Source: Phyllobates terribilis
Taxonomy: Eukaryota
DNA length: 64,000 bases
Assembly: GCF_046119375.1 (NCBI RefSeq)
Contig: NW_027362768.1
Span: 56,668,001 to 56,732,000 of the forward strand
Direction of reading: 5' to 3'
Below, one piece after another: positions 8,701 to 54,489 of the stretch (within the stretch, counting starts at the first letter, position 1; each line of letters opens with the position of its first letter). The notes beneath the pieces are model-generated. The model had not been told where the DNA came from and ran no database searches. It saw only the letters and a list, made by a program, of their open reading frames with translations. The position numbers and the translations under genes were made by a program.

Positions 8701-9766
8701 TAAATTATCTAATACAAACAAGTCCAAAATTTCTTGGTGAACTCCATTGATAGTGAGGGGAAATGCAGCAACCTTGTGAGTAATATATTTCAAGGGAGTG
8801 TTATCAATTGCAATCACAGAAATAGGTGATGACAAAGGTTTGGATTTCAATTTAAGGTTTTCCAAGAACCCTTTATCAATCATATTAAGTGTTGAACCAC
8901 AATCAACAAATACCTGAAATTCAATCAAATATTCCTGCAAAGTAGTACTCCCAGAAAGAAATACGCCTGCAGAGTGTAAACAAGCAATACGGGCGTACCT
9001 GACCTTTTTTTTTCTTTATTTAAACGAAGCACACAATCCTTAATCAAATGGTCAGCTTTACCACAATAAAGACACAATCCCTCAGCAAACCTCCGGTCTC
9101 TTTCCTGAGAGCAGAGTGACATCGCCCCAACCTCCATCGTTCTTTGCCGTCTGAGCAGATTTTCTGGGGACTAGGACCTGACATTACAGGAGTTTTTACC
9201 TCATTCAGCCTGAACCTTAGCCTCCTGTCCACACGAACAGCTAATTGCATGGCATCCTGCAGAGTCTCAGGTGCAGGGAATGCAATTAGCAGATCCTTAA
9301 CCCTTTCACTCAGACCAGCAAGAAATAAACATTTCAGAGCAGGATCATTCCATAAGACTTCTGAAGCCCATCTTCTGAAGTGTGTGCAATAATTTTCAAC
9401 ATCACCTGACCCCTGATTCAAACGCCTGAGTTCTGCCTCAGCAGATGAGATTCTATCAGGATCGTCATATAATAGACCCATAGCAGAAAAAAATTCTTCT
9501 ACAGACCTTAAGCATGGATCATTAGGTTGGAGAGAAAAGGCCCACCCCTGTGGTTCATTGCGCAAAAGTGACATAATAAAACCAATGCGCTGTGATTCAT
9601 TCCCAGAGGACCTTGGTCTCAAACAAAAATATAACAAACAAGCATTTTTAAAGGAAAAAAAATCTTGCTGTTTACCATAAAAAACATCAGGCAGTCCTAC
9701 CTTGGGTTCCACAAAATGCGCTCCAGAACAGCCACTCACGTATTGCTGTAGATCGGCCACCTCCAC
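5752..9766 (-). pseudogene. gag-pol of Gypsy element 1 (fragmented)
   Basis: ORFs 9044-9766 (gag), 8925-9137 (CLYCGKADHLIKDC), 8155-8940 (protease/RT start), 7228-8154 (RT/RNase H), 6414-7301 (integrase) and 5752-6117 (chromodomain), in canonical order but different frames. Confidence 0.93.
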
Positions 9767-10381: not shown

Positions 10382-10545
10382 NNNNNNNNNNNNNNNNNNN
10401 NNNNNNNNNNNNNNNNNNNNNNNNNNNNNNNNNNNNNNNNNNNNNNNNNNNNNNNNNNNNNNNNNNNNNNNNNNNNNNNNNNNNNNNNNNNNNNNNNNNN
10501 NNNNNNNNNNNNNNNNNNNNNNNNNNNNNNNNNNNNNNNNNNNNN
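10382..10545. other. Assembly gap (164 N)
   Basis: Run of N characters. Confidence 1.
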
Positions 10546-10689
10546 TAAATAGATGATTTATTAGCTCAGCAAGAGCTGTGGCAACGTTTCGGCTGAATAC
10601 AGCCTTTCTCAAGCAAAAAAGCTTGAAAAAGGCTGTATTCAGCCGAAACGTTGCCACAGCTCTTGCTGAGCTAATAAATCATCTATTTA
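10546..10689. repeat. Near-perfect 144-bp palindrome (69-bp arms, A6 loop), probably a Penelope-type terminus
   Basis: 10546-10614 is the reverse complement of 10621-10689 with one mismatch. Each arm carries CTTGA(G/A)AAAGGCTGTATTCAGCCGAAACG followed by AATAAA. Confidence 0.85.
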
Positions 10690-11694: not shown

Positions 11695-12760
11695 TGTTAC
11701 AGATCCGGGTGGTGGAACCTCTGTGCTGCGGTGCAAGGAGGGACCAGCATAACTAGGTATCCACTCGGGTTGACCAAGGTCGTACAGCGGCTCAATCGAC
11801 TCTGTGACCAGGGAAGGACTGAGCAGAGGGACCAGGTGCTACTCTGGGCCAGACCTTGTATGAGAGCAGGTGACTCCCACGGGTCAGAAGGCAGGGACTG
11901 ACCAGTACAGCAGATGAGCACGGCAGGCAGGCTGACGGGTGATTCGGCTAGACGGACTGGCAGACACGGCAGGTAACAAGCTGGAGCCTCCAGGTAGGCT
12001 GGCTGGTAGGCACGGCAGGTAACAAGCAGGAGCCTCCAGGTAGGCTGGCTGGTAGGTACGGCAGGTAACAAGCAGGAGCCTCCGGGTAGGCTGGCTGGAA
12101 GGCATGGCAGGTAACAGGCCGGTGCTTCCAGGTAAGCAGGTGGGTAGAGCCCAAAGACAGACTGGCAGACTGGACTGTAGACAGACTGTCAGGCTGGAGA
12201 GTAGTCAGGCTGGCAGATTGAACTGTTAATCAGGCTGGCGGACACAACTGGTTGTCAGGCTGGCGGACTGGACTGGTAGTCAGGCTGGCGGACTGGACTG
12301 GTAGTCAGGCTAGCGGACTGGACTGGTAGTCAGGCTGGCGGACTGGACTGGAAGTCAGGCTGGCGGACTGAACTGGAAGTCAGGCTGGTGGACTGGACTG
12401 GTAGTCAGGCTGGCAGCGGGACCTGAGGGCTGAAGCAGAGTGTAACACACAAAGCTACAACCTTGCACGGGCACCTCCATTTTGGAGGAGGTGCCTTTTA
12501 TATGAGAGGTCCTCTGGCCATTGGCCGGGGACTCCTTAGGACGGCGCGAGCGGCCCCTTTAAGAGGGAGGGAGCGCGCGCGCCCTAAGCACAGTGCCCGG
12601 GAAGCTGCGCGCGCCGACAGCAGCAGAAGCAGGAACGTCGGAGGATGCCGAGCGGGGAGCGCGGCGGTAAGAGGGTCGGCGTCTCTGCCTGTCAGGGGGC
12701 AGAGACGCCGATACTACAGTACCCCCCCCTTTATGCCCCCTCTTTTTTAGGCCTGAAAGA
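11695..12760 (-). mobile_element. Gypsy LTR (~1 kb) with PPT and short internal stub; same family as the LTR at 48546
   Basis: TGTTACA...TACTACA ends at 11695 and 12718. Polypurine tract (minus strand) at 12719-12745. Internal GC-rich minisatellites. Reverse complement aligns with 48546-49323. Confidence 0.85.
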
Positions 12761-13213: not shown

Positions 13214-16200
13214 TATATATCCATCTGAACTAACAGTCCGTCTGAGGACTAATCCAGCTGCATATATTCAGTGGTATTTGCAGGAGTTAGGCAGGCAGGG
13301 TATGTGGCAGACTGCAGTGCATATAGTGCAAGAGGGTCCATTGAACGTCCCTGCTGCTGTTCTTACAGATATTTGTAGACATAGCACCAGATATCAGGGG
13401 CCAGGGAAAAAAAAATGTGATCTTAATCCTGGTTATTTGCTTGAAAAGCAATCCAGAGTGCACCATTTTTCTGCTCCATTTGCTTGTTCTCACTGCAGAA
13501 TAAAGCCAGATCTGTTCCATATTTCAGCAATAAAAATCCAGAAATTTAAACTGAATGTGGAAAATATTGACCTCCTTTTCAATTCTGTTGCAGTGTCTCG
13601 GTCAAGCTATTCATACTAGGTGTCTGTGAAGAATAGTATTAGTAAATTACAGGCCTTCTATTTAAAACCGTGGTTCTCTGTCAGACATATCACCTATAAG
13701 AGTGTTCCAAAATCAGACATTTCTTTCATTTTCATTCTGTTGCAGTGTGTCAGTCAAGCTGTTCACACTAGGTGTCTGTGAAGGATAGTATTAACAAATT
13801 ACAGGCCTGCTATTTAAAATTGTGGTTCTCTGTCAGACGTATCACATATAACTGCGTTCCAAAATCAGCCATTTCTCGTGAACTTGGAAAATACTGTCCT
13901 CCATTAAAAATGGACAAGGTGCGTGGCAAGGGACAGGGAAGTGGACGTGATGGTGTTGGTGCATGCAAAGGCCGAGGACGTGGCCGTGGGCAAGCTGAAA
14001 TTGTGCCACAACAAACACCCACATCTTGTCGCTCGACCTTCCTGCCCCAATTAATAAGGGGCCGCAGAACCCCACTATTGAACAGAGAGCAGTATCAAAA
14101 GGTTATTGGTTGGATAGCAGATAATGCTTCCAGTCATTTAGCCACCACCACCACACCACCCTGTCTTCCACACGGTCAAGTCTCAGTAGCCGTGAGTCTG
14201 GACTGCATATTCCTCACACTGATTCTCCTTCCTCTAACCATGCCGAGTGCCCGGAGACAACTAATCCCACACTTGGACACTCCGAAGAGCTGTTCACTTT
14301 TCCATTTTTAGATTCGGGCCTCTCGCCCGGCCAGCTTCAAGCGAGTCAAGAGGAGATGCCCAAATATTGGAGCAGTCACGATCACACGAAGGCGACGGTG
14401 GGAAACTGCAATTACTGTCGCAAGAGGTGAATGATAATGATGATGAGACAAAATTGCCAGAAAGTCAGGAGGAAGACCAGGGTGCAGAAGTGGAAGACGA
14501 GGTGGTGGATGATATAGTAACTGACCCAACCTGGTAGGGGGACATACAGAGTGAGAACAGCAGCACACAAGGGGAGGGAGGCGTAGCACTACAACAGGCA
14601 GGAAGAATCAGTGTGGTGGCCGCAGACACAAGGCCGTAAAGCGTTCCTCATAACGCCAAAACAACGGAAGTTGCCAGCACAACTGTTAGGTCTTCCCTAA
14701 TCTGGTAAATTTTTTAAAGACTCTGCAGATAACCCCAAAATGGCCATTTGCACCACCTGCCAGGCCAGCATCAGCAGGGGTAGCAAAACTAGCAGGCTGA
14801 CCACAACCAGCATGATCAGGCACATGGCAGCAAAATACCTAAGTGGACAGAACCCCAGGGTCCAGAACAGAGTGACACCACTGCTTATTCCACTGTTGTG
14901 CGTGCACGCCATTCCCCTGTCCATGGCGCATGCCAAGATACCTCCTGCCCTTCACGTGTCAGTGCTAGTTGAGAATGTACAACATCAGCAAGCACGTGCA
15001 CGTCCTTGTTCCAGCGCAGCGTTCAGTTGTCCCTACTCCAGTCCTTGGAATGCAAGCACAAATATGCAGCCAACTCCCCACAGGCCACACTACTAAATTC
15101 ACAAATTTTGAGAATGCTTGTGCTCGAAATTTGCCTTTTAGGCTCGTGGAGATGGAATCTTTCCGCAACCTGATGGTGGCGGCCGTCCCTCGGTATTCGT
15201 TCCCCAGCCACCACTATTTCTCCTGGTGTGCCATCCCTGCATTACAAGAGCACGTGTCCCACAACATTAGACGTGCCCTCAACAACGCAGTTAGTGGGAA
15301 AGTCTAGAGATGAGCGTTGTTCTACTCGAACTGTTCGCCAATCTCAAATTCGAGCTGTTTTGGGCGGTGTTCGAGCCGGTCGGCGAACACGAACAATTTG
15401 AGAAAAATTCGGCTGTTCGAGGTTATGTTCGATAACTGTTCGTGCACCAAAATCATAACTGGATTTTTTCTCAGTAATGATGAAAATTAATGTTAATACG
15501 CAGTTTGAGTGTACAGCGGGGTGGGGGCAGGGGCAGGGGATGGATCTCTGCAGGAACAATGAAGATCTCCATTTTTTTTTCTCTTTCCCGCATTTGCAGT
15601 GGGGAGGTGCAATCTGTCAGCCTATCAGCAGCGCACACACGGAGCGAAGTGCTTTTTTTCACACAAGCAAGGGCATGTGTGATTGGCAGTGTATGTCACA
15701 TGTCCTTGCCCTATAAGACCAAGCCATTTTCCCCGTCGCCACCATTTTCTCACTGCTGCAGCTGCGTGTTAGACGGCACCGCTGTTGCTGTGTGCGCTAT
15801 ACCTTGTTAATTTCAAGCCAATTTTCGCACAAATATACAGATAGCTTGGGAGTAGGGAATAGTTGTGATTGCAGTCCTTTTAAGGACTAGGTTACAGCAT
15901 TTCCTACGACTTTTATCAGGCAGGTCTGTGCTCTTAAATAGATAGATTGTGGGAGTAAAGACTAATTGTAATTGGAGTCCTTTTCAGGACTAGGTTACAT
16001 CAGTTCCTATCAGTTTTTGCCAGGCAGGTCTGTGCCAGTGCTGTGCAAGTTTTTTTCACAGCATTTGGCTGAATCTAGCAAAGCTAATCCTTTTTGGCCT
16101 ATTGCAGAGTGTGTTAGTCAGTGGAGTAGCCTATCTGTGTTGCAAGATATACCACCTGTGTATAGAATACCAATTTTTTTACTGCACCTAGTGAAGTAAA

Positions 16201-16221
16201 ATCTTTTGGGCATAGCATCAT

Positions 16222-17827
16222 TCTATTAGTCCATCTATACTGACCTCCATCAGGTTGCAAACTGAATATAATTTTTTTCTGCATCTAGCTCTGAAAAAAT
16301 ATTTGGGCTTCTAGCAGTGTGTGGGACTTGGTCTATTAGTCCATCTATACTGACCTCCATCAGGTTGCAAATTAAAAATAATTTTTTTCTTCATTTATCT
16401 CTGAAAAAATATTTGGGCTTCTAGCAGTGTGTGGGACTTGTTCTATTAGTCCTTCTATACTGACCTCCAGCAGGTTGCAAATTGAATATAATTTTTTTCT
16501 GCATCTAGCTCTGAAAAAATATTTGGGCTTCTAGCGGTGTGTGGGACTTGGTCTATTAGTCCATCTATACTGACCTCCATCAGGTTGCAAATTAAAAATA
16601 ATTTTTTTCTGCATCTAGCTCTGAAAAAATATTTGGGCTTCTAGCAGTGTGTGGGACTTGGTCTATTAGTCCATCTATACTGACCTCCATCAGGTTGCAA
16701 ATTAAAAATAATTTTTTTCTTCATTTATCTCTGAAAAAATATTTGGGCTTCTAGCAGTGTGTGGGACTTGTTCTATTAGTCCTTCTATACTGACGTCCAG
16801 CAGGTTGCAAATTGAATATAATTTTTTTCTGCATCTAGCTCTGAAAAAATATTTGGGCTTCTAGCGGTGTGTGGGACTTGGTCTATTAGTCCATCTATAC
16901 TGACCTCCATCAGGTTGCAAATTAAAAATAATTTTTTTCTGCATCTAGCTCTGAAAAAATATTTGGGCTTCTAGCAGTGTGTGGGACTTGGTCTATTAGT
17001 CCATCTATACTGACCTCCATCAGGTTGCAAATTAAAAATAATTTTTTTCTGCATCTAGCTCTGAAAAAATATTTGGGCTTCTAGCAGTGTGTGGGACTTG
17101 GTCTATTAGTCCATCTATACTGACCTCCATCAGGTTGCAAATTAAAAATAATTTTTTTCTTCATTTAGCTCTGAAAAAATATTTGGGCTTCTAGCAGTGT
17201 GTGGGACTTGTTCTATTAGTCCTTCTATACTGACCTCCAGCAGGTTGCAAATTGAATATAATTTTTTTCTGCATCTAGCTCTGAAAAAATATTTGGGCTT
17301 CTAGCGGTGTGTGGGACTTGGTCTATTAGTCCATCTATACTGACCTCCATCAGGTTGCAAATTAAAAATAATTTTTTTCTGCATCTAGCTCTGAAAAAAT
17401 ATTTGGGCTTCTAGCGGTGTGTGGGACTTGGTCTATTAGTCCATCTATACTGACCTCCATCAGGTTGCAAATTAAAAATAATTTTTTTCTGCATCTAGCT
17501 CTGAAAAAATATTTGGGCTTCTAGCGGTGTGTGGGACTTGGTCTATTAGTCCATCTATACTGACCTCCATCAGGTTGCAAATTAAAAATAATTTTTTTCT
17601 GCATCTAGCTCTGAAAAAATATTTGGGCTTCTAGCAGTGTGTGGGACTTGGTCTATTAGTCCATCTATACTGACCTCCATCAGGTTGCAAATTGAATAAA
17701 AAAATTTTCTGCATCTAGCTCTGAAAAAATATTTGGGCTTCTAGCGGTGTGTGGGACTTGGTCTATTAGTCCATCTATACTGACCTCCATCAGGTTGCAA
17801 ATTAAAAATAATTTTTTTCTGCATCTA
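16222..17827. repeat. Tandem array of a 110-bp unit, ~14.5 copies
   Basis: CCATCTATAC (or CCTTCTATAC) recurs every 110 bp from 16231 through 17771. Confidence 0.97.
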
Positions 17828-17943
17828 ACCCAGCCAATAGTTTTGGCCTAATACCACAGTTTGGCCACTCAGCTCTGCTCGGTTACCATCCATTGTTTTT
17901 TTGTGCAAACAACTCCAGAGTTGTGAATTAGTTAACCACCAAA

Positions 17944-20900
17944 ATGAGTGGAAAAAGGCCTGCTGCTGGTGGAAAGGGGAATAGGCGTGTTGGGAAGGGG
18001 AAAAAAGGTTGTGTCCGTGGGGTAGGTGCAGAAGAAAGACCATCTTCCAGCCAAACTAAAATGTCTACTTCTTTTAGCGGACAATGTGATAAGATCCCTT
18101 TCTTACGGCCACGCCAATCGCTACAAATTCCAGATGAGGCACAAAAACAGCAGGTGCTTCAACGGATATCAAGTGCTCCTTTAAGTGGGCTCTCCTCCAC
18201 ATCAACTTCAACATCACAAATACTCCAGTCCTCAAAGGTGTCACCCAAATCGCACTTGCTTCCTCACAGCTCCCAAATCTCCAGCTGCCCGTCTGAGTAT
18301 GAGGTAGAACAGATGGTTGAGTCTGCAGAGCTGTTTACTCATACTATAGCCTGGGAATCAGAGGTAGACTCCAGCGCTTCTGTGAATCCAGACGAGGAAA
18401 TGATCTGCACTGATGCCCAGAATCTTTATGAGTCGGATCCAGGACCAGACGCAGAAGGTTCTGACCATAATGTAGACCCTCATTCCCAAACTGTAACTCC
18501 TGTTGGTGGAGACAATGAGGAAGACGATGATAAGACTCAAATACCTGATTGGAGCGACAACTTTAGTTTTTTGTCAGGGCAGGAACAGGTTGGCTCTGAG
18601 GACGACGGGTGTGATAACGCACAGGGTGATGATGATGAGGTCGGAGATCCCACTTACTGTCAACCCACAGTCAGCCAAGAGATGAGGTCAGCAGAGGAGG
18701 TGGAGGAAGATGCTAGTGACGACGAGGTCAGGTTGCGCCTTCCTGGACAGAGACGTAGTACTGGAAGCACGTCAACAACTGCATCCTCAAACACAACTCT
18801 GCCTCTCACCACAAGTCGTGGTGGCTCTTCAGGTCGCATGGGTGCTAAGCCTTGCATAGCCTGGTCATTTTTTCAGATCGATAAAGATGACCCAACTCGT
18901 GTTATCTGTAACATTTGTCAGCAAAAGCTAAGTAGAGGCCAAAAAATACATAGTTTGAGTACTTCATGCATGAACCGGCACATGGACATGAAGCATAAGT
19001 TGCAGTGGGAAGCTCAGTGTGCTACAATGCGGTCTAGCCGGCCGGGCCAACCACCGTCTGCCATATCTTGTGCATCCGCGGCCTCTTCATCCTCTGTGAC
19101 TGGGGGGACAGCAGTCACACCTGTTTTGGGGCGCAGACCTGCCACCTCTTTACCCGCAACAGCCAGCGTGATTGGCAGGTCATCATTTTCTTTGGAGGTG
19201 GTAACACCAGCTGGTCTTGAGCGCTGTCCGACATCGATAGCACCACCTTTGGATCAAGGCAACCTAACATGTCCGCCTGCATCTTCCTCACAGACCGGCA
19301 GTTTGCCGGGGACACCCTTATCAACCCCGTCTAAGCACAATAGCCAGCCCTCGGTCCCTCAGATGTGGACAAGTAAAAGACCATTTCCTCCTAGCCATGA
19401 GAAAGCTAAGAGGTTGAATTTCACCATCTGCAAGCTCTTGGCTACAGAAATGCTGCCTTTCCGCCTGGTGGACACAGAGGATTTTCGAGACCTTATGTCC
19501 GTCGCAGTGCCCCAGTACCAGATGCCCAGTCGGCACTACTTCTCAAAGAAAGGTGTGCCTGCGCTCCACCAGCATGTCGCACACAACATCACCGCTTCTT
19601 TGAGAAACTCTGTGTGTGACAGGGTGCATTTCACCACAGACACTTGGACGAGTAGGCATGGACAGGGGCGTTACATGTCGCTGACTGGGCACTGGGTAAC
19701 TATGGTGACAGCAGGACAAGGGGCTGCTGTCCAAGTCTTGCCGTCCCCACGAGTTGTGCGTCAATCCTCTTTATGTCATTTTTCCTCCACTGCTTCTGCC
19801 TCCTCAACCTCCTCTCGGTCTTCCACCTGCACCCAAAGCCTGTCTGGTCATGCCACAAGCTTTCTAACTGCGCAGAAGGGATCCTGCACACCTCCTTACT
19901 ATGCTGGCAGTAGGGCTCAACGTCATCAGGCGGTTTTTACATTGAAATGTCTGGGAAATGTGAGTCACACAGCTGAGGAGTTGTGGTCAGCTCTGGAGAA
20001 CCAATTTCATGAATGGTTGTCTCCACTGGACCTGAAACCAGGGAAGGCCGTGTGCGACAATGCTGCAAACCTGGGTGCGGCCCTTCGCCGGGGCAATGTC
20101 ACACACGTGCCTTGTATGGCTCACGTGTTGAACCTGGTTGTCCAGCAATTTTTAGCCCACTATCCCAGACTAGATGGCCTTCTGCAGAGGGCACGGTCGC
20201 TGTGTGCTCACTTCCGCCGTTCGCATCCCGCAGCTCAGCGACTTACATCTCTACAGAAGTCGTTGGGCCTGCCACTTCACCGGCTAAAATGTGATGTGCC
20301 TACCCGGTGGAATTCAGCTCTGCACATGTTGCAGCGACTGTGGCAGCACCGACAAGCCCTGGTGCAATACGTTCTGACGTATAGCCTGGGCCAACGAGAT
20401 TCAGAGGTGGGGCAAATCACGCTGGAGGAGTGGTCTCAGATCAGGGACCTATGCACCCTTCTGCACAGTTTTGAAATGGCGACGAAGATGTTTAGTTCTG
20501 ACGATGCCATTATCAGCATGACTATTCCGGTGATTTACATGCTGGAGCACATGTTAAACAGAATTCGGAGTCAGGTGGTGGCACAAGAGGAGGTGGAGGA
20601 AGTAGAGGAGGAGGAGTTGTATGCGGAAGGGCTAACATCTGCAAGGTCCAGACGGTCGGCAGCACCAGGGCGGCAGGCATGTGAGGGTGGGGGAGATGAT
20701 TTTACCAGGGCGCATGGTAGCAGCCAAACTAGTGAGGAAGGTGCAGGAGCCCAGGAAGAAGTGGAGGACGAACTGATGGAAGACTCATCAGATGAGGGAG
20801 ACCTTGATCACATTTCTGTTGTGCGAGGTTGGGGGGAGAGGACAGAGGAAGGAAGCATGATTGTTACCTCGCCACCAACACAACAGGGACTTGGTGCTCC

Positions 20901-21624
20901 TGGATGCGCAACACACATGAGTGCCTTCTTGCTGCACTACCTGCAACATGACCCTCGAATTGTGAGAATTAGAAATAATCCTGACTACTGGGTTGCCACA
21001 CTGTTAGATCCCTGGTACAAAAGTAAATTTGCAGAAATTATTCCTGCCATAGAAAGGGATGCACGCATGCAGGAGTATCAGCAGAGACTGTTGCAGAATC
21101 TTACATGTGCTTTTCCACAAAATACCAGTGGTGCACGTAGTGAATCTCACAGTTCCAACTTGCCAACCGTGGGACCGTCAAGTGTTCAGCACTCAAACCG
21201 TAACAGAACCACAGTATCTGCTGGTAACATCAATTTTGCGGAATCATTTCACCACTTTTTTAGCCCATCCTTTGCAAGGCCACAGGAGACAAGAAGTCTG
21301 ACACATAGTCAACGCCTAGAGACGATGGTACAGGAGTATCTCCAAGTAAACATTGAAGCCACGACTGTGTCACTGGACCCTTGCTCTTTTTGGGCTTCCA
21401 ATCTGGATAAATGGCCGGAGCTAGCCACTTACGCCTTGGAGATCTTGTCATGCCCCGCAGCCAGCGTTCTGTCTGAACGTGTGTTCAGCGCTGCTGGTGG
21501 TGTGCTGACAGATAAGCGCACGCGGCTCTCCACTGATAATGTAGACAGACTCACGTTCATAAAGATGAACAAATCATGGATCCGAAACGACTTTTCTACC
21601 CCTGTGTCATCCTGGGGAGAGTAA
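17944..21624 (+). CDS. hAT-superfamily transposase, 1226 aa, uninterrupted (BED zinc finger, DDE catalytic domain, C-terminal dimerization domain)
   Basis: BED finger WSFF...VICNICQQKL...MNRHMDMKH. Catalytic motifs FTTDTW, VCDNAAN, CMAH (CxxH), DVPTRWNS and SERVFSAAG. No stop or frameshift over 3681 bp. In-frame upstream TAG at 17929-17931. Confidence 0.96.
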   Translation: MSGKRPAAGGKGNRRVGKGKKGCVRGVGAEERPSSSQTKMSTSFSGQCDKIPFLRPRQSLQIPDEAQKQQVLQRISSAPLSGLSSTSTSTSQILQSSKVSPKSHLLPHSSQISSCPSEYEVEQMVESAELFTHTIAWESEVDSSASVNPDEEMICTDAQNLYESDPGPDAEGSDHNVDPHSQTVTPVGGDNEEDDDKTQIPDWSDNFSFLSGQEQVGSEDDGCDNAQGDDDEVGDPTYCQPTVSQEMRSAEEVEEDASDDEVRLRLPGQRRSTGSTSTTASSNTTLPLTTSRGGSSGRMGAKPCIAWSFFQIDKDDPTRVICNICQQKLSRGQKIHSLSTSCMNRHMDMKHKLQWEAQCATMRSSRPGQPPSAISCASAASSSSVTGGTAVTPVLGRRPATSLPATASVIGRSSFSLEVVTPAGLERCPTSIAPPLDQGNLTCPPASSSQTGSLPGTPLSTPSKHNSQPSVPQMWTSKRPFPPSHEKAKRLNFTICKLLATEMLPFRLVDTEDFRDLMSVAVPQYQMPSRHYFSKKGVPALHQHVAHNITASLRNSVCDRVHFTTDTWTSRHGQGRYMSLTGHWVTMVTAGQGAAVQVLPSPRVVRQSSLCHFSSTASASSTSSRSSTCTQSLSGHATSFLTAQKGSCTPPYYAGSRAQRHQAVFTLKCLGNVSHTAEELWSALENQFHEWLSPLDLKPGKAVCDNAANLGAALRRGNVTHVPCMAHVLNLVVQQFLAHYPRLDGLLQRARSLCAHFRRSHPAAQRLTSLQKSLGLPLHRLKCDVPTRWNSALHMLQRLWQHRQALVQYVLTYSLGQRDSEVGQITLEEWSQIRDLCTLLHSFEMATKMFSSDDAIISMTIPVIYMLEHMLNRIRSQVVAQEEVEEVEEEELYAEGLTSARSRRSAAPGRQACEGGGDDFTRAHGSSQTSEEGAGAQEEVEDELMEDSSDEGDLDHISVVRGWGERTEEGSMIVTSPPTQQGLGAPGCATHMSAFLLHYLQHDPRIVRIRNNPDYWVATLLDPWYKSKFAEIIPAIERDARMQEYQQRLLQNLTCAFPQNTSGARSESHSSNLPTVGPSSVQHSNRNRTTVSAGNINFAESFHHFFSPSFARPQETRSLTHSQRLETMVQEYLQVNIEATTVSLDPCSFWASNLDKWPELATYALEILSCPAASVLSERVFSAAGGVLTDKRTRLSTDNVDRLTFIKMNKSWIRNDFSTPVSSWGE

Positions 21625-21831
21625 AAGCTTGATGATTGGTTAAAATCACCCTACCAACCGTTTTAAGCTTTCAAATTACTAATCATGTTTATCTGTATCT
21701 TGACTGGAAAATAATTTGGGCTTTGTAGCAGTGTGCAGCACTGATCCTATTAGGCCATCTATAATAAGCTTCACCAGATTTAAAATTAAAAATAATTTTT
21801 AGCTGCATCTAGCCCGGAAAATAATTTTGGG

Positions 21832-23393
21832 GCTCCGAGATGCGCAAGACACATAAGTGCCTTCTTGCTGCACTACCTGCAGCATGACCCTCATATTGTC
21901 AGAATTCGAAGTAATCATGACTACTGGGTTGCCACACTCTTAGATCCCCCAAACTTTTCGATCAACCTTTTCATTTTAATAAAGACCAAAAAAATGGTCA
22001 TTTTTGAAATTATAAGCATTAGCAGGTTGTTAGAAACTGAAATCAAACAGTTTTCAACTCAAAACTTTATTCTAGGTGATGTTACATTTTCACATAGGAC
22101 CCCTTGTTCGAAAGGAGCTTCTGAACTCTCTCGTCCATTGAATTTGTCAGGTTTTGGATGGTTTCTGCTTCAATTGTTTTGCATGAGGACAGAATACCCT
22201 CCCAGAGCTGTTGCTTAGATGTGAACTGCCTCCCGCCATCATAGACACTCCTTTTAATGATGCTCCAAAGGTTCTGAATGGGGTAGAGGTCAGGGGAGCA
22301 TGGGGGTCACACCATAAGTTTGTCCCCTTTTATGCCCATATCAGCCAGAGATGCAGATGTTTTATGTGCAGCATGAGATGGTGCATTATCATGCAGAAAA
22401 ATGATCTTGCTGTGAAATACACGGTTCTTCTTCTTGAACCATGGCAGGAAGTGCTGTTTGAGAAAATCCACATACATTATGGAGTTCATCTTTAGCGCCT
22501 TCAGGGATCCTAAAGGGGCCGACAATCTCTCTCCCCATGATTCCAGCCCAAAACATTACTCCACCTCCTCCTTGTTGGCGCTGTAGCCATGTTTGCGTGG
22601 GGTGTCCATCAACCAGCCATCCTCCACTCCATTCATCTGGACCATCGAGCGCTGCACGGCACTCATCCGTGAACAAAACAGTTTTGAAATCAGTCTTCAT
22701 GTAATGTTTGGCCCACTGGAGCCGTTTCTGCTTGTGTGAAGTGGATAGAGGAGGTCGACAGGATGGCGTATGCACAGCTGCAAACCTCAGAAGGACCCTG
22801 CATCTTGTTGTTCGGGGGACGTTGGAGGCACAAGCAGCTTCAAAAACTTGTCTGCTGCTATGACGAGGCTTTTTTGCCGCTGCTCTTTCAACCTGACGTA
22901 ATTGCCTGTAGGAAAGAGTCCTCAATTTGCCCTTATCAGCACGCACACGTGTGTACTGTGAATCAGCTACATACTTCTTGATTGCCAAGACACTTCATCC
23001 TGATCATCGCACAATGTTGATTGTAGTCATGCCTTGACCTAAACACTCCACAATTTGTTGCTTCTCAGCAGCCGACACATCCTTTTTCTTTCCCATTTTG
23101 GCAGAAAATGTAGGCTGCTTAATAATGTGAGAGAGCCTTCTTAAGTAGTCTTGCCTTTCATTGGACACACCTGCCAAACTAATTAGCACAGGTGTCTGCA
23201 ATTGCTTACAGTGATATAAAGAGCCCTGACACACATCACCATCAATGAGTTTAACTGACAAACAAACAAATTCTTCCCTTATCACTCCTAAACACTTTTT
23301 GCATAATAATTTGGAACGCGGTGTACATGTGCTTTTCCACAAAACACCAGTGGTTCACATAGTGAATCTTACAGTTCTAACTTGCCAACCGTG
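21832..23393 (+). pseudogene. Diverged partial second copy of the hAT-A transposase 3' region, split by a Tc1
   Basis: 21832-21949 matches ~20897-21013 at about 90% (LLHYLQHDP.IVRIR.N.DYWVATLLDP). 23324-23393 matches ~21104-21173. Confidence 0.85.
21951..23323 (-). mobile_element. Decayed Tc1 transposon inside hAT element A
   Basis: 5' TIR reads CACCGCGTTCCAAATTATTATGCAAA on the minus strand, followed by TA at 23324-23325. ORFs 22389-22988 (VLFTDE...VMFWAGI) and 22307-22525 (FLHDNAPSH). 3' TIR missing. Confidence 0.9.
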
Positions 23394-23399
23394 GTCTGT

Positions 23400-23850
23400 A
23401 TGGAATTGTTCAATAAAGGGCCCAAAATTAAGATAACATAGATGGGAGAGGTCTCTATGAATAGGAATTCCTAAGTATTTGATACCCTGTGAGGGCCAGG
23501 CAAAGGGAAAGTTGGACTGGATGGAATCCTATATGGATTTAGGGAGGGAGACATCGAGGGCCTCAGACTTCGCTGCATTGATTTTAAAATTTTACCATGT
23601 AACAAAGTGATCTATTTCAGCCATAACAGCAGGGATGGATATATGTGATTGAGTGATATATACTAGGACATCATCAGCAAATAGAGAGCACTTGTACTCG
23701 GTGCCTCCCACCTCAATCCACCTAATATTGGGGTTATGGCGAATTGATGAGAGCAGGTGCTCCGTCACTAGGATGTATAAGAGAGGGGACAGAGGACATC
23801 CCTGCCTTGTCCCATTGGTGATTGTGAAAAGTGATGAAAATGTTCTGACG
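23400..23850 (-). mobile_element. LINE (L1-clade) reverse transcriptase fragment
   Basis: ORF 23592-23954 contains FTITNGTRQGCPLSPLL...SLFADDVLVY. Confidence 0.85.
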
Positions 23851-25056
23851 CACCCCCTGGGCCTTGGGACACCCGGAGCCGGACCCTTTTTGGTGGATGC
23901 TGGTGGTTGTAGTCTTTGTGGCGGCGATCCGGTTCCGTGGCTCAGGGCGGTCAAACCAGTGGCGGAACTATTTATGTGGTTTTGATGTTTAAATGTCCGA
24001 CTACGCCACCCGTGGATTGCGGTCAGAGTGAACCGCCGCTACAGGGCAGACCGCTAAGGCTGGTGTTGTGGGTGCAGCAGAGCGTAGCATAACTCCCCAC
24101 GGGAGGAGTATAGCCTCAGGGCAGTGTATGCGGAGGATGGGGGTGATGGTGCAGGGCAGCAGCAGTAACGACACGGAGTCAGTGATGCAGTTCAGGGCCT
24201 TTACTCACAGTTCTTATTATCCAGACCACGTCTGCAGGTAACGGCTGCCCACGTCGTACTGTGCTCACCAGGTGAGGGGCTCAGACAACTCCCAGATAAC
24301 TTTGGAGCGCTTCACAGGACCCCCTTTGTGTGTCCTTTGTCTGGCCTTTCTTACCAACACTTCTGTCCGGCTGCCTCGGGCCTCCTCTTGGTAAACTTGG
24401 CGCCAGTTTCCCTGACCCTATGTGGTGCCTTCCTAGCGGGTGGAGCAAGGGGCTGCGCCACATAAAATGTCAGAGCCTCCGGTTTCTAGCTGAGGGTCGT
24501 TTCCTGCCTCCACTAGTTCGGGGACCGGTCTCCCCCTTTGGCCTGACCCCTCCACGCAGGTGGATTCGGGCGTGCGGTGGCGACTCGCCCGTCCGCACCC
24601 CTGGGATCCCTTCATTCCTCGTTCCTGGAGCCTTCTCCGCTCCTCTTCCTTCCTTCTCCCTCTTGCAGGCCTGGGCCTCTGTTACTAGGCCTGCCTCCGG
24701 AGCAGAGCTCATGCAGAGCCCCTGCTCCCTGCCACTTCTGCTCAGACTTCTCTGCACTGAACTAAGATAGTGCCCACCTTTTATACTCCCTTCTCAATGC
24801 ACCCAGGAACTGCTTCCTCCCTGCTCCTGCACTGCAGGGTTCCCCTTCCTCAGTGTTCCCTCCCCCCACTCCAGCCAGGGACAGGGACTGTCGTGCCCAT
24901 CTCAGGGGCATATTGGTCGCCCTGCCCCACGGCAATGTGGTGTAATGCATGCAGGTGTCGGGTCCTGATCCACACTCCATCCTTATCTGAGAGTGAGATA
25001 TCACACCTCTGGGTGAGGTGCAATACGTCTGTAGCAACCGAGCCCTCGGTGCTACA
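23850..25056. mobile_element. GC-rich ~1.2-kb non-coding insertion, possibly a solo LTR
   Basis: Sharp GC shift that truncates the L1 fragment. Ends in the hairpin TGTAGCAACCGAGCCCTCGGTGCTACA. No convincing ORF; left boundary uncertain. Confidence 0.4.
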
Positions 25057-25322
25057 GTTCCATTTATCTTCAGCCTAGGTGACGTATTGTGATACAGGGC
25101 CGTGATTTTGGCTATAAAAGGGTCCCCTAGACCCCTACCCCAAGCTTTTTAAGAGAATCATATATGGCGTGCCAGGAGACTCTATGGAATGCTTTCTCAG
25201 CATCCAACGAGAGTATCTACTTACAAATTTTTAACTGCATCTAGCCCAGGAAATACTTTGTGCCTAGTAGCAGTGTCTGCTAGTCAGCGGATTATCCCGG
25301 CTGTTAAGCAAGCTACACCACC

Positions 25323-25597
25323 TGTAGTTTGGACACTTAATTTTTTCAAAGGAAATGCTTCGGGACCACAGGATACTTAGTGAAGAGCATCAGGAGGCAC
25401 CCCAAGGCATAGGGGCTGGGACTGGCACTAGGATGCCTTGCGGTGGACAGCCGAGCTCGATCCTTATAAAAGCTTTTTAACTGCAGCAGCTTTAGTGGAC
25501 GCTACTGGAGCTGGAATTACGCGGCTGCTGGCATGAGACTTGCCCTCCAATAGATCCTTGTAAATGGATTTAAAGTGTATTCATTCAAATTAGAGGG
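25323..25597 (-). pseudogene. 18S rRNA gene fragment (~275 bp, degenerate) inside hAT element A
   Basis: Minus strand reads CCCTCTAATTTGAATGAATACACTTTAAATCCATTTACAAGGATCTATTGGAGGGCAAGTCTCATGCCAGCAGCCGCGTAATTCCAGCTCCAGTAGCG...GCTGCAGTTAAAAAGCT...GGATCGAGCT...GTCCCAGCCCCT...GATGCTCTT...CCCGAAGCATTTCCTTTGAAAAAATTA. This is colinear with 18S across the universal GTGCCAGCAGCCGCGGTAA motif and the start of V4. Confidence 0.92.
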
Positions 25598-28122
25598 ACA
25601 ATTTAAATTAAAAAGCTTAGAGCTGCCTCCACCACAGGGGGGCTCTCTCGACCCACCAGCGTACAGGCACCAGTATTGGGAGAGGGGGGCTGGCCGTCAG
25701 GGTTCACCGCGGCTCTGGCACAAACCCGGCGACACGGAGGTGGCACGGGCAGGAGCGGACTGGCCGTCTCGGCTTCTCACTTTTTGGATTTTAGAAGGGC
25801 ATGACATGCCTATATCTGTGTCTCCCCCTCCTTTTACTCCTCCACCTCTTTTCTTTTCGCATGACTATATGTACTTGTCACTTTTCCATGTGTTAGTTGT
25901 GTCTTCTGAGCAGTTTGTCAGCTTTTGGACACCTTTGAAGGTGTTTTCTATGTGTTTCTATGTGTTTTTGTTTGCCTGCCATTGGTTTTAACGGTGTTCG
26001 AAGGTGTTCGACGAACAGTTCGGCGAACACACGGGTGTTCGACGAACCGAACCGAACTCGAACACTACGGGGGTGGCTCAACACTAGGAAAGTCCTCCTA
26101 ACCACGGACACATGGACAAGTATTTGTGGGCAGGGACGGTACATCTCGCTGACGGCACACTGGGTTAATATAGTGGAAGCAGGGACCCAGTCAGACCTTG
26201 GGACGGAACACGTCCTCACGACGCCGAGGAATTTCGAGCCCTGGGTCAATCAGGGTTGCCCCCACATTCTACAGCTCCTGCACCTCCTTCTCCTCTTCAG
26301 CCTCCATCTCCGAAATGACCACATCAGTCGCAAGCTGTAAGCACTGCAGCACTGCCTCGGCCAAGCGGCAACAAGCTGTGCTGAAGCTAATATGCTTAGG
26401 TAACAAACCGCACAATGCTGAAGAGTTGTGGACAGCTCTGAAAGAGCAGGCAGATCTGTGGTTGACACCGCTAAACATACAGCCAGGTATGGTCATGTGT
26501 GACAATGGCAGGAACCTGCTAGGGGCTCTGAGGTGAGCTCACACACGTACCATACTTGGCCCATGTGCTTAACCTCATGGTTTAGCGGTTTCTCAAAACC
26601 TACCCGAATCTGTTTGTCAAAGTACGCCGCCTGTGTGCCTATTTTGGAAAGTCAGCTACAGCTTGCGCCGCCCTTGCAGTGCTTCAGCAGCATTTGCAGC
26701 TTCCAGCTCACCAACTGTTCATGCTATGTTCCCACGCATTGGAACTCTACATTGCAGACGTTGGGAAGGAATTGTGAACAGAAGAGGGCAGTTGTTGACT
26801 ACCAGCATCAACAAGGCCGTCAGTATTCAGCTCAGACTCCACACCTAAAACCTCAGGGGTGGACACGGATGTCAGACATATGTACCATCCTCCAAAACTT
26901 TGAGGATTCCACCAAGATGGTGAGCGGCGATGACGCCATAATTAGCAGACCATCCCGCTTCTCTGTCTTCACAGTTAAAGAGGATGCATTGCAGGCGGAG
27001 TACGATGAGATGGAGCAAGGAACCGTACAGGGTGATTACACACAGTCCAGCCTCATCTCATCCCAACGTGCATTCGGTGACAATGAGGAAGAGGAGGAGG
27101 AGGAAGAACAGGAGCTAGTTTCCTGCACTATAGACGGTACTACCTGCACAACTGTCATACCGTTTGTTCAGCGTGGATGGCCTGAGGACAGGTAGGAGGA
27201 GGATGAGGAGGAGAACATGGTTAGTCATCCTTTTGGTGAGGATACAGAAGTCTTGCCTGTTAGCAGTCTAAGTTTGTTACGCTACCTTTCCCATGACCCT
27301 CACGTTGTCCAATTTTTTGGTGACAGTCATAACTGGTTAATGACACTTCTAGACCCACGCTACAAGGAGAACTTTCTGTCTCTTATTCCCTTGCAGGACA
27401 GGCCTAATAAAATGGGGCAGTACGGCCCTTGTTGCGGAATTATTTAAAAAAATTACCATCTTAAAACGCTGGCAGCAGAAGTCACAGTTCGTTGGACTAC
27501 CAAGTAGTACAGGCAAGAGAGACACAAATGCAATAAAGCAGAGGCACGGGAACACTGTCAAAGTTCTGGGACAGTTTTCTCAGATCCTCCCATCTCACAG
27601 GCCCTGAGGTGCGGGGTATTCTCCCAAGGAAGGAAAGTTTCGGAAGATGGCGAGGGAGTACCTTGCCGACTGTACCAATGTCCTCTGTGATTCCTCTGTA
27701 CCTTATAATTATTGGGTATCCAAGCTGAACACGTGGCATGAACTGGCTTTCTACACCTTGGAGGTCCTGGCTTGCCCTGCCGCTAGCGTTTTGTCAGAGC
27801 GGGTTTTTAGTGCCGCTTGTGGGATTATAACTGATAGGCGCATCCGCCTGTCAACTGAAAATGCTGACAGGCTGACTCTTATAAAAATGAACAAGGGCTG
27901 GACTGGGTCAGACTTCTCAACACCACCGAATGATAGTAGCATAACATAAACTCAAATACAGTGTCTTTTTTTTGGGAGGTCTAACTCTATTCCCATGCAC
28001 ATCTGTCTTCACACCCAGACATGGGTATACGCTTCCTGATTTTGTCTATTTGCTCTTGTCCTCATCCTTCTCCGCATCCTCATCCTCCACCACCATATGT
28101 ACCATATCAACATATATACGAC

Positions 28123-28880
28123 TCTTGCAAGGAGCATTGGAGTTCTTCCAATTTTTTGGCAGCCGTTGCTTCACTGCATAGGCAAACAGTATGGGAGACA
28201 TTTCCTAATAATGGGAGCATTTTTTCCAGGAGGCCCTCTGACCTCTACGTCTCTTGCAAGGGGCATTGGAGTTCTTCCAAATTTTTGGCAGCCGTTGCTT
28301 CACTGCATAGGCACACAGTATGAGAGACACACTTCCTAATAATGGGAGCAATTTTTCCAGGAGGCCCTCCGACTTCTACATCTATTGCAAGGGGCATTGG
28401 AGTTCCTCCAAATTTTTTGCAGCCGTTGCTTCACTGCATAGGCAAATAGTGTGGGAGACACACTTCCTAATAATGGGAACATTGTTTTCAGTAGGCCCTC
28501 TGACCTCTACGTCTCTTGCAAGGGGCATTGGAGTTCCTCCAAATTTTTGGCAGTCATTGCTTCACTGCATAAGCAAACAGTATGAGAGACACACTTCCTA
28601 ATAATGGGAGCATTTTTTTGCAGGAGGCCCTCTGAACTCTTCGTCTCTTGCAAGGGGCATTGGAGTTCCTCCAAATTTTTGGCAGCCGTTGCTTCACTGC
28701 ATAAGCAAACAGTATGAGAGACACACTTCCTAATAATGGGAGCATTTTTTTGCAGGAGGCCCTCTGAACTCTTCGTCTCTTGCAAGGGGCATTGGAGTTC
28801 CTCCAAATTTTTGGCAGCCGTTAGTCACTGCATACACAATAACAGTATAGGAGACCCACTCGTTAATAATGGGAACAACA
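28123..28880. repeat. Tandem array of a ~131-bp unit (~6 copies) downstream of the hAT-B transposase
   Basis: TCTTGCAAGGGGCATTGG-like anchor at 28123, 28252, 28383, 28514, 28646 and 28778. Confidence 0.93.
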
Positions 28881-29589
28881 AAGCATAGCCGACTGCTGGC
28901 CCTTTAAGAATAGTAAGGGCCGTCTGATGGCCCTATAAAAATAGTCTTTGTGACTTTCAGAGTCCATCCATCATAAATGAAACAGCATGTGTCTGATGAT
29001 GTGTCACACACCACATGGCCAGATAAGGTTGTAAAATGTTAAAATTACATTTCCCGGTGAATACATTTGTCTTGGTTGAAAGCAATGCAAAAGTGCAAAA
29101 ACGCATCAAAAACGCTACGTGTGAACATAGACCAAGGTGTGGAGGAGCATTTTTGTTTTTGTATATTTATTTTGCCTTGTATACATGTCGTTACCCTGGA
29201 AAGGATGTTCCTTAACATATTTCCCAGGAAAATCCATTTTGGTTTAGTTTTTGTATGTTTTATTGTGAGTCCATAAAAGTGGCATAATACCTCCAACAAT
29301 GTGGTTGACAGCAGGGAACTGGGAGTCAGAAATGCTTCCAGGGGTCTTCCCCATGCTGTTCCCATGTCATTTGAGCACTGTTCCCTTCGATTTGGGCAAT
29401 TTTTAGGCCCTCTGCAGACCCCCAGCGAGAGCCACCGGAAAAAAGCTCAAGTTTCCCATAGACTTGCATTGGGCTCGTTACTCGGTCCGAGCACTCGAGC
29501 ATTCCAATTTGCTCAACTCGAACAACGAGTACCCGAGCATTTTAGTGCTTGCTCATCACTATTTATTATACTTTGCTTTTATAGTGCCA

Positions 29590-53816: not shown

Positions 53817-54489
53817 TAGTGTTGAGTAAGCATGCTCGACACTGCTCGGTACTCGCCCGAGCATCACGCTACTCGAAATGTTCGGCGAGCACGGAGCATT
53901 TCCGGGTTACTCGGGCGGGAGCTCGGGTCTCCGCCCTGCATGTTTGGCACTCTTTACAGAGCCAATGAACATGAAGGGATTGCCAGCCAGTCACTGTAAT
54001 GCCGCAGCCATATTGGTTGTGGGCATTACATTGATTGGCTGGCCGCACAGCGTCACCTCGAGTATTTAAAACAGGGCGCCGCCATCTTGGACACAGACGG
54101 CTGGGATCAGACAGTGTAGGGACAGCACTGCTGATTTAGGGAGAGATATATACTGCGAAATAGTTAGTGTAGGGTCTGTAAAGGCTGCCACATCAAACAA
54201 ACAGTCCTTCTCAGGACTAATATCCATCCCAGATATCAGTCAGGCAGGCAGGCAGGCAGGCTGTATAGTAGACACAGTGGTTATACCAGCAAATGCGGCA
54301 TTACAGTCCTGTGTGCTCCTGTTGCTGAAATTGCTGGACTTAGCTCCAGGTCACGGGGGCCAGGAAAAATCCTTTTTTTTTCATCTAAATCCTCTTTTTT
54401 TTTTCCTCCTTCACACTGTACAAATACCTGTCTTATTAACCTTTTGGTGTCCCACCCCCCAAAAAAAAAAAAAAAAGTCTGTCTCTCAT

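What the first reader, a model, noticed from the sequence alone, without database searches (positions are those of the whole stretch)
25323..25597. 18S rRNA fragment embedded antisense in the right arm of a hAT transposon
Seen: ~275 bp colinear with 18S, including the universal GCCAGCAGCCGCG(G)TAATTCCAGCTCC motif and the start of V4, with vertebrate-like GGATCGAGCT and GTCCCAGCCCC segments. It lies 490 bp inside the right TIR, directly after a degenerate array unit, and is antisense to the transposase. If the 21832-25220 cargo is removed it would sit only a few hundred bp past the stop codon. Inference: a DNA transposon that captured rDNA and may disperse it. A read-through transcript would be complementary to 18S rRNA, with possible effects on ribosome or nucleolar association, rDNA homing, or small-RNA evasion. 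It could also confound 18S primer surveys. I do not recall this being described for a hAT, but I have not been able to search.
Basis: partly seen in the sequence, partly recalled or inferred. Interest (0 to 1): 0.8.

Follow-up and report, generated by a model that had tools for sequence, protein, structure and literature searches.

The report
Decayed 18S fragment inside a frog hAT transposon
A roughly 300-base, badly decayed piece of the host's 18S ribosomal RNA gene really does sit inside a frog hAT transposon, but it looks like a neutral passenger, and I could not test whether other copies of the transposon carry it.

Summary
Rfam's eukaryotic SSU rRNA model matches the minus strand at 25499-25618 (63 bits, gathering score 50, E 2e-14). 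A truncated-mode alignment is colinear with model positions about 505-790, which is window 25323-25612, possibly reaching about 25640.

The piece lies inside a genuine hAT element at 15305-26086. The element has a perfect 8-bp target duplication (GGAAAGTC), and removing it restores the reading frame of an older hAT. It carries an intact 1226-aa zf-BED/hAT transposase.

The fragment is a pseudogene. About 12 of 98 near-invariant SSU positions are changed, one base is deleted in the GCCGCGGTAA loop, helices are broken, and CpG content has fallen to the genome background.

That decay is several-fold more than the intact ORF could have tolerated. So either the capture predates this copy's arrival, or the right half of the element is older than the left. 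The right half is a junkyard of diverged transposase pieces, a Tc1-like fragment and an RT fragment.

Family-wide presence could not be tested, because no frog genome DNA was reachable. Three other hAT copies in the window lack the piece. The proposed functions (antisense effect, rDNA homing, primer confusion) have no support. The finding is real but probably ordinary.

The parts
15297..15304 (.). Left copy of the 8-bp target-site duplication, GGAAAGTC
   Evidence: It is identical to 26087-26094. Joining the flanks with one copy restores a continuous hAT reading frame (...LLTTDTWTS...) in the outer element.
15305..15450 (+). Left end of the focal hAT: TIR TAGAGATGAGCG plus subterminal GTTCG/CGAAC motifs
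   Evidence: The TIR matches the reverse complement of the right end (TAGTGTTGAGCC) at 9 of 12 positions.
16112..17951 (+). Tandem array of 110-bp units upstream of the ORF (about 15-17 units, 90-100% alike)
17944..21624 (+). Intact 1226-aa hAT transposase ORF with zf-BED, the TTDTWTS motif and the hAT C-terminal dimerisation domain
   Evidence: The closest proteins are from dendrobatoid frogs.
21666..21834 (+). Two degenerate 110-bp units just past the stop codon, the second cut short at about 21830
21827..21948 (+). Diverged duplicate (89%) of ORF segment 20891-21012; start of the 'cargo'
21949..23323 (-). Truncated Tc1/mariner-like fragment (weak HTH_Tnp_Tc3_2 match, below Pfam's cut-off)
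23324..23394 (+). Diverged duplicate (93%) of ORF segment 21102-21172
23592..23954 (-). Reverse-transcriptase fragment (RVT_1)
23955..25225 (.). Unclassified G+C-rich filler
   Evidence: no family match and no rRNA match
25226..25322 (+). Degenerate 110-bp array unit abutting the 18S piece. The junction shares CCTG with both the unit and the 18S sequence.
25323..25612 (-). 18S rRNA pseudogene fragment, Rfam SSU model about 505-790 (530 loop to V4). Weak similarity may extend it to about 25640.
25613..25989 (+). Right arm, unclassified, with no other copy in the window
25990..26086 (+). Right subterminal repeats (GGTGTTCGA three times) and right TIR ...GGCTCAACACTA
26087..26094 (.). Right copy of the target-site duplication, GGAAAGTC

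Best explanation
The stretch is a dead fragment of about 290-320 bp from the host's 18S rRNA gene, running from the 530-loop region through V4. It was copied at the DNA level into the 3' non-coding region of a hAT transposon, between the short repeat units that follow the transposase stop codon and the right arm.

The most likely route is filler or template-switch synthesis during double-strand-break repair after an excision. The same kind of sloppy repair would explain the neighbouring out-of-order duplicates of transposase segments. This route is inferred, not shown.

Since then the piece has decayed as neutral, methylated DNA and does nothing for the element. Its decay far exceeds what this copy's intact ORF could have undergone. 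So the capture happened well before this copy's coding half was last under selection. The piece was probably already on board when the 10.8-kb element inserted here, which makes it a hitch-hiker moved at least once. That last step is inferred.
For: - Identity as 18S: (63 and 70 bits, E 2e-14 and 1e-18, colinear over model positions about 505-790).
- Inside a genuine transposon: the TIRs, a perfect 8-bp TSD, and the empty-site join that restores the outer hAT frame; an intact zf-BED/hAT ORF.
- Pseudogene status: I counted about 12 of 98 upper-case (near-invariant) consensus positions changed in the alignment. One base is deleted in GCCGCGGUAA, and many pairs are flagged non-canonical.
- CpG observed/expected is 0.48, against 0.43 for the whole window.
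- Age contrast: in simulation the 3.7-kb ORF stays free of stops in 21% of trials at 1% substitution, 7% at 2%, and 0 of 300 at 5%.
- Signs of repair or rearrangement beside it: 21827-21948 and 23324-23394 are 89% and 93% copies of ORF segments placed after the stop codon, interleaved with Tc1-like and RT debris.
- There is no poly(A) tract at the 3' end of the 18S piece, which argues against LINE-type retroposition.
- TEs carrying rDNA-derived modules are a known phenomenon (PMC10946416, Table 2).
Against: - I could examine no other copy of the family, so 'carried by the lineage' rests only on the age contrast.
- That contrast can also arise if the right half (21827-26086) is an older dead copy joined to, or converted by, a younger left half.
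- The divergence of the 18S piece (12/98) is not statistically different from that of the duplicated ORF pieces (18/193; Fisher p = 0.54).
- An 8-bp TSD stays perfect about 40-50% of the time even at 10% divergence (my own estimate, 0.9^8, not a tool result), so it does not date the insertion.
- The repair mechanism is inferred from anatomy alone.
Confidence: 0.6

Rival explanations
1. The fragment is a one-off at this locus. The right half of the element (from about 21827 to the right TIR) is an old, dead copy that accumulated unrelated insertions (Tc1-like, RT fragment, filler). The 18S piece is just one more of these. The intact left half was joined to it later by ectopic recombination, gene conversion or template switching. 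The family as such does not carry 18S.
For: - The 3' half contains nested or foreign debris and diverged (89-93%) transposase pieces.
- The divergence of the 18S piece is statistically indistinguishable from that of those pieces.
- None of the other three hAT copies in the window, which belong to other families, has an 18S piece.
- Scattered rDNA pseudogene fragments are common in vertebrate genomes (PMC8954558; PMC10946416 citing Robicheau et al. 2017).
Against: - It needs an extra non-colinear joining event to explain an intact ORF beside an old right half sharing one perfect TSD.
- The 18S piece is bracketed on both sides by element sequence: an array unit on one side and the right arm on the other.
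- The other hAT copies in the window are only 37-58% identical in protein, so their lack of 18S says little about this family.
Confidence: 0.33
2. The fragment is a functional module kept by the transposon. Possibilities are an antisense 18S segment in the transposase 3' UTR affecting RNA localisation or ribosome association, a homing sequence for rDNA, or a decoy or source for small RNAs.
For: - If the cargo is removed, the piece would lie about 310 bp past the stop codon, and an ATTAAA hexamer sits at its far edge (25607). It could therefore be part of a 3' UTR in a cargo-free copy.
- Some TEs do exploit rDNA-derived modules, such as 5S promoters in SINEs and Cassandra (PMC10946416).
Against: - Near-invariant SSU positions are mutated, a base is deleted in the 530 loop and helices are broken.
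- CpG content has fallen to background, unlike the subterminal arms at 0.69-0.79.
- The longest runs identical to the SSU consensus are about 15 nt, shorter than a small RNA.
- In this copy three poly(A)-type hexamers (21785, 21978, 23412) precede the piece.
- The element sits in another hAT, not in rDNA, so there is no sign of homing.
Confidence: 0.04
3. The match is a chance resemblance or an assembly chimera with true rDNA.
For: None beyond the general possibility.
Against: E-values are 2e-14 and 1e-18, with colinearity over about 290 bp. The piece is too diverged from functional 18S to be a misjoined read of real rDNA. Its flanks are continuous element sequence.
Confidence: 0.01

Closest known systems
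Scattered rDNA pseudogene fragments in vertebrate genomes (Robicheau et al. 2017 as cited in PMC10946416; PMC8954558)
   Same: A short, diverged, non-functional piece of an rRNA gene lying outside the rDNA arrays and decaying neutrally.
   Different: Here the piece sits inside the TIR-bounded body of a DNA transposon, so it may be mobile with it.
Pokey (piggyBac) of Daphnia, which carries rDNA IGS-derived repeats upstream of its transposase (Elliott et al. 2013 as cited in PMC10946416)
   Same: An autonomous DNA transposon with an internal tandem array and an rDNA-derived internal module.
   Different: Pokey's module comes from the intergenic spacer, is a fixed part of the family, and Pokey targets 28S rDNA. 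Here the piece comes from the 18S coding region, the element is a hAT inserted in another hAT, and family-wide presence is untested. I saw no sign that the 110-bp array here derives from rDNA.
SINE28, 5S-derived SINEs and Cassandra LTR elements (PMC10946416, Table 2)
   Same: Transposable elements whose sequence includes an rRNA-gene-derived segment.
   Different: Those are retroelements. For the 5S-derived ones, the module supplies a Pol III promoter. An internal 18S piece has no promoter and nothing here suggests a use.
Transduplication of host gene fragments by DNA transposons (Pack-MULEs, Jiang et al. 2004 as cited in PMC10946416)
   Same: A host gene fragment lies between the ends of a cut-and-paste element, presumably acquired during repair synthesis.
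   Different: Pack-MULEs are non-autonomous Mutator elements in plants with many amplified copies. Here an apparently autonomous animal hAT is seen in a single copy.

Membership tests
hAT superfamily DNA transposon | 8-bp target-site duplication | tested here: met
   GGAAAGTC at 15297-15304 and 26087-26094. The empty-site join restores the host hAT frame.
hAT superfamily DNA transposon | Short terminal inverted repeats of the TAG/CAG type, plus subterminal repeats | tested here: met
   TAGAGATGAGCG against TAGTGTTGAGCC (9 of 12). GTTCG/CGAAC motifs are clustered within 140 bp of both ends.
hAT superfamily DNA transposon | Transposase with zf-BED, a catalytic core and the hAT C-terminal dimerisation domain | tested here: met
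   PF02892 (3e-10) and PF05699 (2e-14). The TTDTWTS motif is at residue 566. Relatives carry PF27039. The catalytic triad was not mapped residue by residue.
Functional eukaryotic 18S rRNA gene | Full-length (about 1.8 kb) match with invariant positions and helices intact | tested here: not met
   Only model positions about 505-790 are present. About 12 of 98 near-invariant positions are changed, there is a 1-nt deletion in the 530 loop, and many non-canonical pairs are flagged.
TE family with an rDNA-derived module (Pokey, SINE28, 5S-SINE or Cassandra type) | The module is part of the family consensus, meaning it is present with the same endpoints in many copies | not testable with these tools
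   There is no second copy of the family in the window. Frog assemblies returned no DNA. Collection scans and a word search were blank.
TE family with an rDNA-derived module (Pokey, SINE28, 5S-SINE or Cassandra type) | The module serves the element, for example as a promoter or a target-site link | tested here: inconclusive
   Neutral-looking decay and background CpG argue against a use. Expression could not be examined.
rDNA-targeting transposon (Pokey, R elements) | Inserted at a specific site within an rDNA unit | tested here: not met
   The element is inserted in the ORF of another hAT. There is no other rRNA match in the 64-kb window.
LINE-mediated processed rRNA pseudogene | 3' poly(A) tract and its own target-site duplication | tested here: not met
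   There is no A-run beyond the 3' end of the 18S piece at 25323. It abuts an array unit directly.

The most novel reading that the evidence does not exclude
The antisense 18S piece is a fixed, retained part of the 3' UTR of an active dendrobatid hAT family. It is carried in many copies and affects the element's RNA or the host, for example through pairing with 18S rRNA, nucleolar association, or small-RNA production against or from rRNA-like sequence. The milder half of this reading is that many family copies carry it as a neutral passenger. I put that at about 0.5, and it is only modestly interesting.
Probability: 0.04. Interest if true: 0.7.

Novelty: new member of a known kind. Interest (0 to 1): 0.25.

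Why it matters
If many copies of this hAT family carry the piece, a frog genome with hundreds of thousands of hAT elements would hold a large dispersed population of 18S-like sequences. Three practical consequences would follow:
- rRNA-class repeat annotation would be affected.
- Read mapping and rRNA-depletion statistics would be affected.
- It would be a documented case of a DNA transposon transduplicating a piece of rRNA coding sequence. The 2024 review of rDNA-TE interplay does not list one (PMC10946416, Table 2).

If it is a single-locus filler, it is an ordinary rDNA pseudogene fragment of no wider consequence. Nothing found here points to a biological function.

Tried and rejected
- Other copies in the window: a self-BLAST of the element against the window found no second copy of the right arm or of the 18S piece. 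A permissive Rfam scan of all 64 kb found no other rRNA match.
- Other copies elsewhere: an exact-protein look-up of the window's transposase found nothing on record. The close dendrobatoid relatives P0003, P0009 and P0013 are on NCBI assemblies too large to serve DNA.
- The only contigs with DNA are distant hATs with downstream flanks under 300 bp and no 18S: L001 (Logan DRR352997) and L002 (ENA ERZ6864144). Neither looked human.
- Exact-pattern scans with a diagnostic pseudo-18S 21-mer and a right-end 20-mer found nothing. Both patterns were scanned against the metagenome and viral collections, and the pseudo-18S 21-mer alone against the bacterial/archaeal genome collection. These collections are not expected to hold frog DNA, so the blanks say nothing about the family.
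- A word search with the 138-aa spurious ORF across the right arm found nothing.
- I considered that the G+C-rich cargo or right arm might also derive from rDNA (ETS, ITS or 28S). There is no Rfam support.
- I considered a composite 'macrotransposon' formed by two hATs flanking an 18S segment. There are no internal TIR-like motifs next to the piece.
- I considered LINE-mediated retroposition. There is no poly(A) tract.
- I tried to date the 18S piece against the duplicated ORF pieces. The difference is not significant.
- I did not run the large representative protein search, because the transposase family was already clear.

Full report
**What is at the coordinates**

A gathering-threshold Rfam scan of the whole window returns a single hit: eukaryotic SSU rRNA on the minus strand at 25499-25618 (63 bits, gathering score 50, E 2e-14). 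A permissive scan of 25150-25750 raises this to 70.3 bits (E 1.1e-18).

That alignment runs colinearly from model position about 505 (AAUGA...) to about position 790. It passes through the universally conserved GGAGGGCAAGUCU...GCCAGCAGCCGCGGUAAUUCCAGCUCC block and the GUUAAAAAGCU block, crosses the variable V4 stretch, and ends at CUUUGAAAAAAUUA.AGUGU.CAAA. In window terms this is 25323-25612. A low-confidence continuation (GGUGGAGGCAGC aligned to GGGGAGGUAGUG) may carry the 5' end to about 25640.

The claim that the V4 part looks vertebrate or amphibian matches my memory of Xenopus 18S. No tool supplied a reference 18S, so this remains a lead and not a test.

**The element around it**

The + strand ORF at 17944-21624 (1226 aa) has a BED zinc finger and the hAT C-terminal dimerisation domain, plus the TTDTWTS motif.

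The element's ends:
- The left end is TAGAGATGAGCG at 15305.
- The right end is ...GGCTCAACACTA, finishing at 26086.
- They match at 9 of 12 positions as inverted repeats.
- Both are followed inward by clustered GTTCG/CGAAC subterminal motifs.
- The 8 bp GGAAAGTC is present on both sides, at 15297-15304 and 26087-26094.

Joining the flanks with one copy of that octamer gives an uninterrupted reading frame...NNAVSGKVLLTTDTWTSICGQGRYISLTAHW..., of a second and older hAT transposase. So 15305-26086 (10,782 bp) is one genuine hAT insertion, nested in another hAT.

Internal layout of the element:
- Left arm.
- A tandem array of 110-bp units at 16112-17951.
- The ORF.
- Two degenerate units at 21666-21834.
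- One more degenerate unit at 25226-25322.
- The 18S piece.
- A 470-bp right arm.

**What the cargo is**

It is not a gene. It begins with an 89% copy of ORF segment 20891-21012 (21827-21948). A truncated Tc1/mariner-like fragment on the minus strand follows; its HTH_Tnp_Tc3_2 match is weak and below the Pfam cut-off. Next comes a 93% copy of ORF segment 21102-21172 (23324-23394), then a reverse-transcriptase fragment on the minus strand (23592-23954), then unclassified G+C-rich sequence.

The 3' non-coding part of this copy is thus a patchwork of out-of-order, diverged element pieces and foreign TE debris. That kind of product is expected from template switching or filler synthesis during break repair, or from long residence of an old copy.

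**State of the 18S piece**

I counted upper-case (most conserved) consensus positions in the high-confidence parts of the alignment. About 12 of 98 are changed. One G is deleted from the GCCGCGGUAA loop, and cmscan flags many non-canonical pairs. Functional 18S does not vary at these positions, so all these changes arose after the piece left the rDNA.

CpG observed/expected is 0.48, the same as the window as a whole (0.43). The subterminal arms, by contrast, are at 0.69-0.79. The piece is a decaying pseudogene.

The longest runs identical to the SSU consensus are about 15 nt.

**Relative age**

In simulation, the 3,678-nt ORF stays free of stop codons in 21% of trials at 1% random substitution, 7% at 2%, and none of 300 at 5%. 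The coding half of this copy has therefore seen at most about 1-2% unselected change, while the 18S piece has seen at least 12%. A capture from live rDNA at this locus after the element landed is excluded.

Two readings remain:
- (a) The piece has been travelling in the non-coding part of an active lineage and came here with the element. In that case other copies should carry it.
- (b) The right half, from about 21827 on, is an older and dead copy that became joined to a young left half. In that case the 18S piece may be private to this locus, like the Tc1-like and RT debris.

The divergence of the duplicated ORF pieces (18/193) does not differ significantly from that of the 18S piece (12/98; Fisher p = 0.54), so the ages do not separate the two readings. 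The 8-bp TSD is too short to date the insertion. I lean to (a) because the piece is bracketed on both sides by element sequence and because one TSD encloses the whole composite, but only modestly.

**Attempts to find other copies**

- The window holds no second copy of the right arm or of the piece.
- The closest transposase relatives are from dendrobatoid frogs: Ranitomeya at 79-94% over parts, and Anomaloglossus at 70-74%. The window is therefore very probably from a poison-frog relative.
- Those relatives sit on NCBI assemblies that are too large to serve DNA.
- The two contigs with DNA, L001 and L002, are distant hATs with flanks under 300 bp and no 18S. Neither looked human.
- Exact-pattern scans of the metagenome, genome and viral collections found nothing, and so did a word search with a right-arm ORF. 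None of those collections is expected to contain this genome, so the blanks carry no weight.
- Three other hAT copies from at least two other families lie in the window. They are the outer hAT with its right end at 29561, a second copy of that family ending at 51680, and a third hAT starting at 53817. They have tandem arrays in their arms but no 18S. The piece is therefore not a general trait of these frog hATs.

**The functional ideas**

In this copy, ATTAAA at 21785 and AATAAA at 21978 and 23412 lie between the stop codon and the piece. Read-through over 3.7 kb is therefore not the default.

In a hypothetical cargo-free copy the piece could lie in a 3' UTR, with an ATTAAA at 25607. That is speculation.

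There is no sign of rDNA homing, since the target is another hAT.

On primer surveys, the piece contains only the 530-loop primer site, with a deletion in it. It ends near model position 790, upstream of the usual V4 reverse sites as I remember them. No amplicon would form.

**Comparison with what is known**

The 2024 review of rDNA-TE interplay lists these TE-borne rDNA modules (PMC10946416, Table 2 and text): 5S promoters in SINEs and in Cassandra and Ajax elements, 28S in SINE28, and IGS repeats in Pokey. It notes that most such modules probably do not benefit the TE. It does not list an 18S coding fragment in a hAT.

Scattered rDNA fragments as such are well known (PMC8954558). hAT and Tc1 elements are very abundant in poison-frog genomes: 3.9% and 6.6% of the Dendrobates tinctorius assembly (PMC11152451).

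At best this is a new member of a known kind. At worst it is an ordinary rDNA pseudogene fragment that happens to lie inside a transposon.

**Verdict**

The most likely reading is a neutral 18S pseudogene passenger, acquired by repair-associated capture before this copy's coding half was last under selection (confidence about 0.6). A locus-private filler is the main rival (about 0.33). A functional role is unlikely (about 0.04). Interest is low to moderate. One BLAST of the right arm against the source genome would settle the only open point.

The N run at 10382-10545 was left untouched.

Noticed in passing
window 14710-15304 and 26095-27925, right end 29551-29561: An older hAT (about 50% protein identity to the focal one, frame broken in several places) is split exactly by the focal element. 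It has its own tandem array of about 120-bp units at 28120-28850 and a right end ...GCTCATCACTA.
   Followed up: partly
window 51680-53816 (minus strand): A second copy of the outer hAT family in reverse orientation. Its end at 51680 mirrors 29440-29561, and a C-terminal transposase piece lies at 53717-53816. It is truncated by the left end of yet another hAT.
   Followed up: partly
window 53817 to about 60344 (+): A third hAT. Its left end is TAGTGTTGAGT at 53817 and its transposase pieces lie at 58258-60335 (37-45% identity to the focal one). A Tc1/mariner-like HTH ORF at 55404-56009 lies within it.
   Followed up: partly
window 16112-17951, 21666-21834, 25226-25322: The focal hAT carries a well-homogenised 110-bp tandem array upstream of its ORF and degenerate copies of the same unit downstream. 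Its origin and role are unknown. It is A+T-rich and CpG-poor (observed/expected 0.13).
   Followed up: partly
window 6414-9766 (minus) and 45293-47780 (+): Ty3/gypsy-type retrotransposon ORFs (gag, protease, RT, RNase H, integrase), split over several frames.
   Followed up: no
window 10382-10545 and 10568-10667: An assembly gap of 164 N, left untouched. Immediately after it is a hairpin-like stretch giving sub-threshold miRNA-family hits on both strands (40 and 32 bits, against cut-offs of about 80), probably just an inverted repeat.
   Followed up: no
window 12000-12450: Two short tandem arrays: 46-bp units at 12000-12147 and 24-25-bp units at 12155-12450.
   Followed up: no
window 25313-25327 and 25626-25638: A short similar motif (CACCAC) lies on both sides of the 18S piece. 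The left junction shares CCTG between the array unit and the 18S sequence. This may be repair microhomology, but it is too short to distinguish from chance.
   Followed up: no
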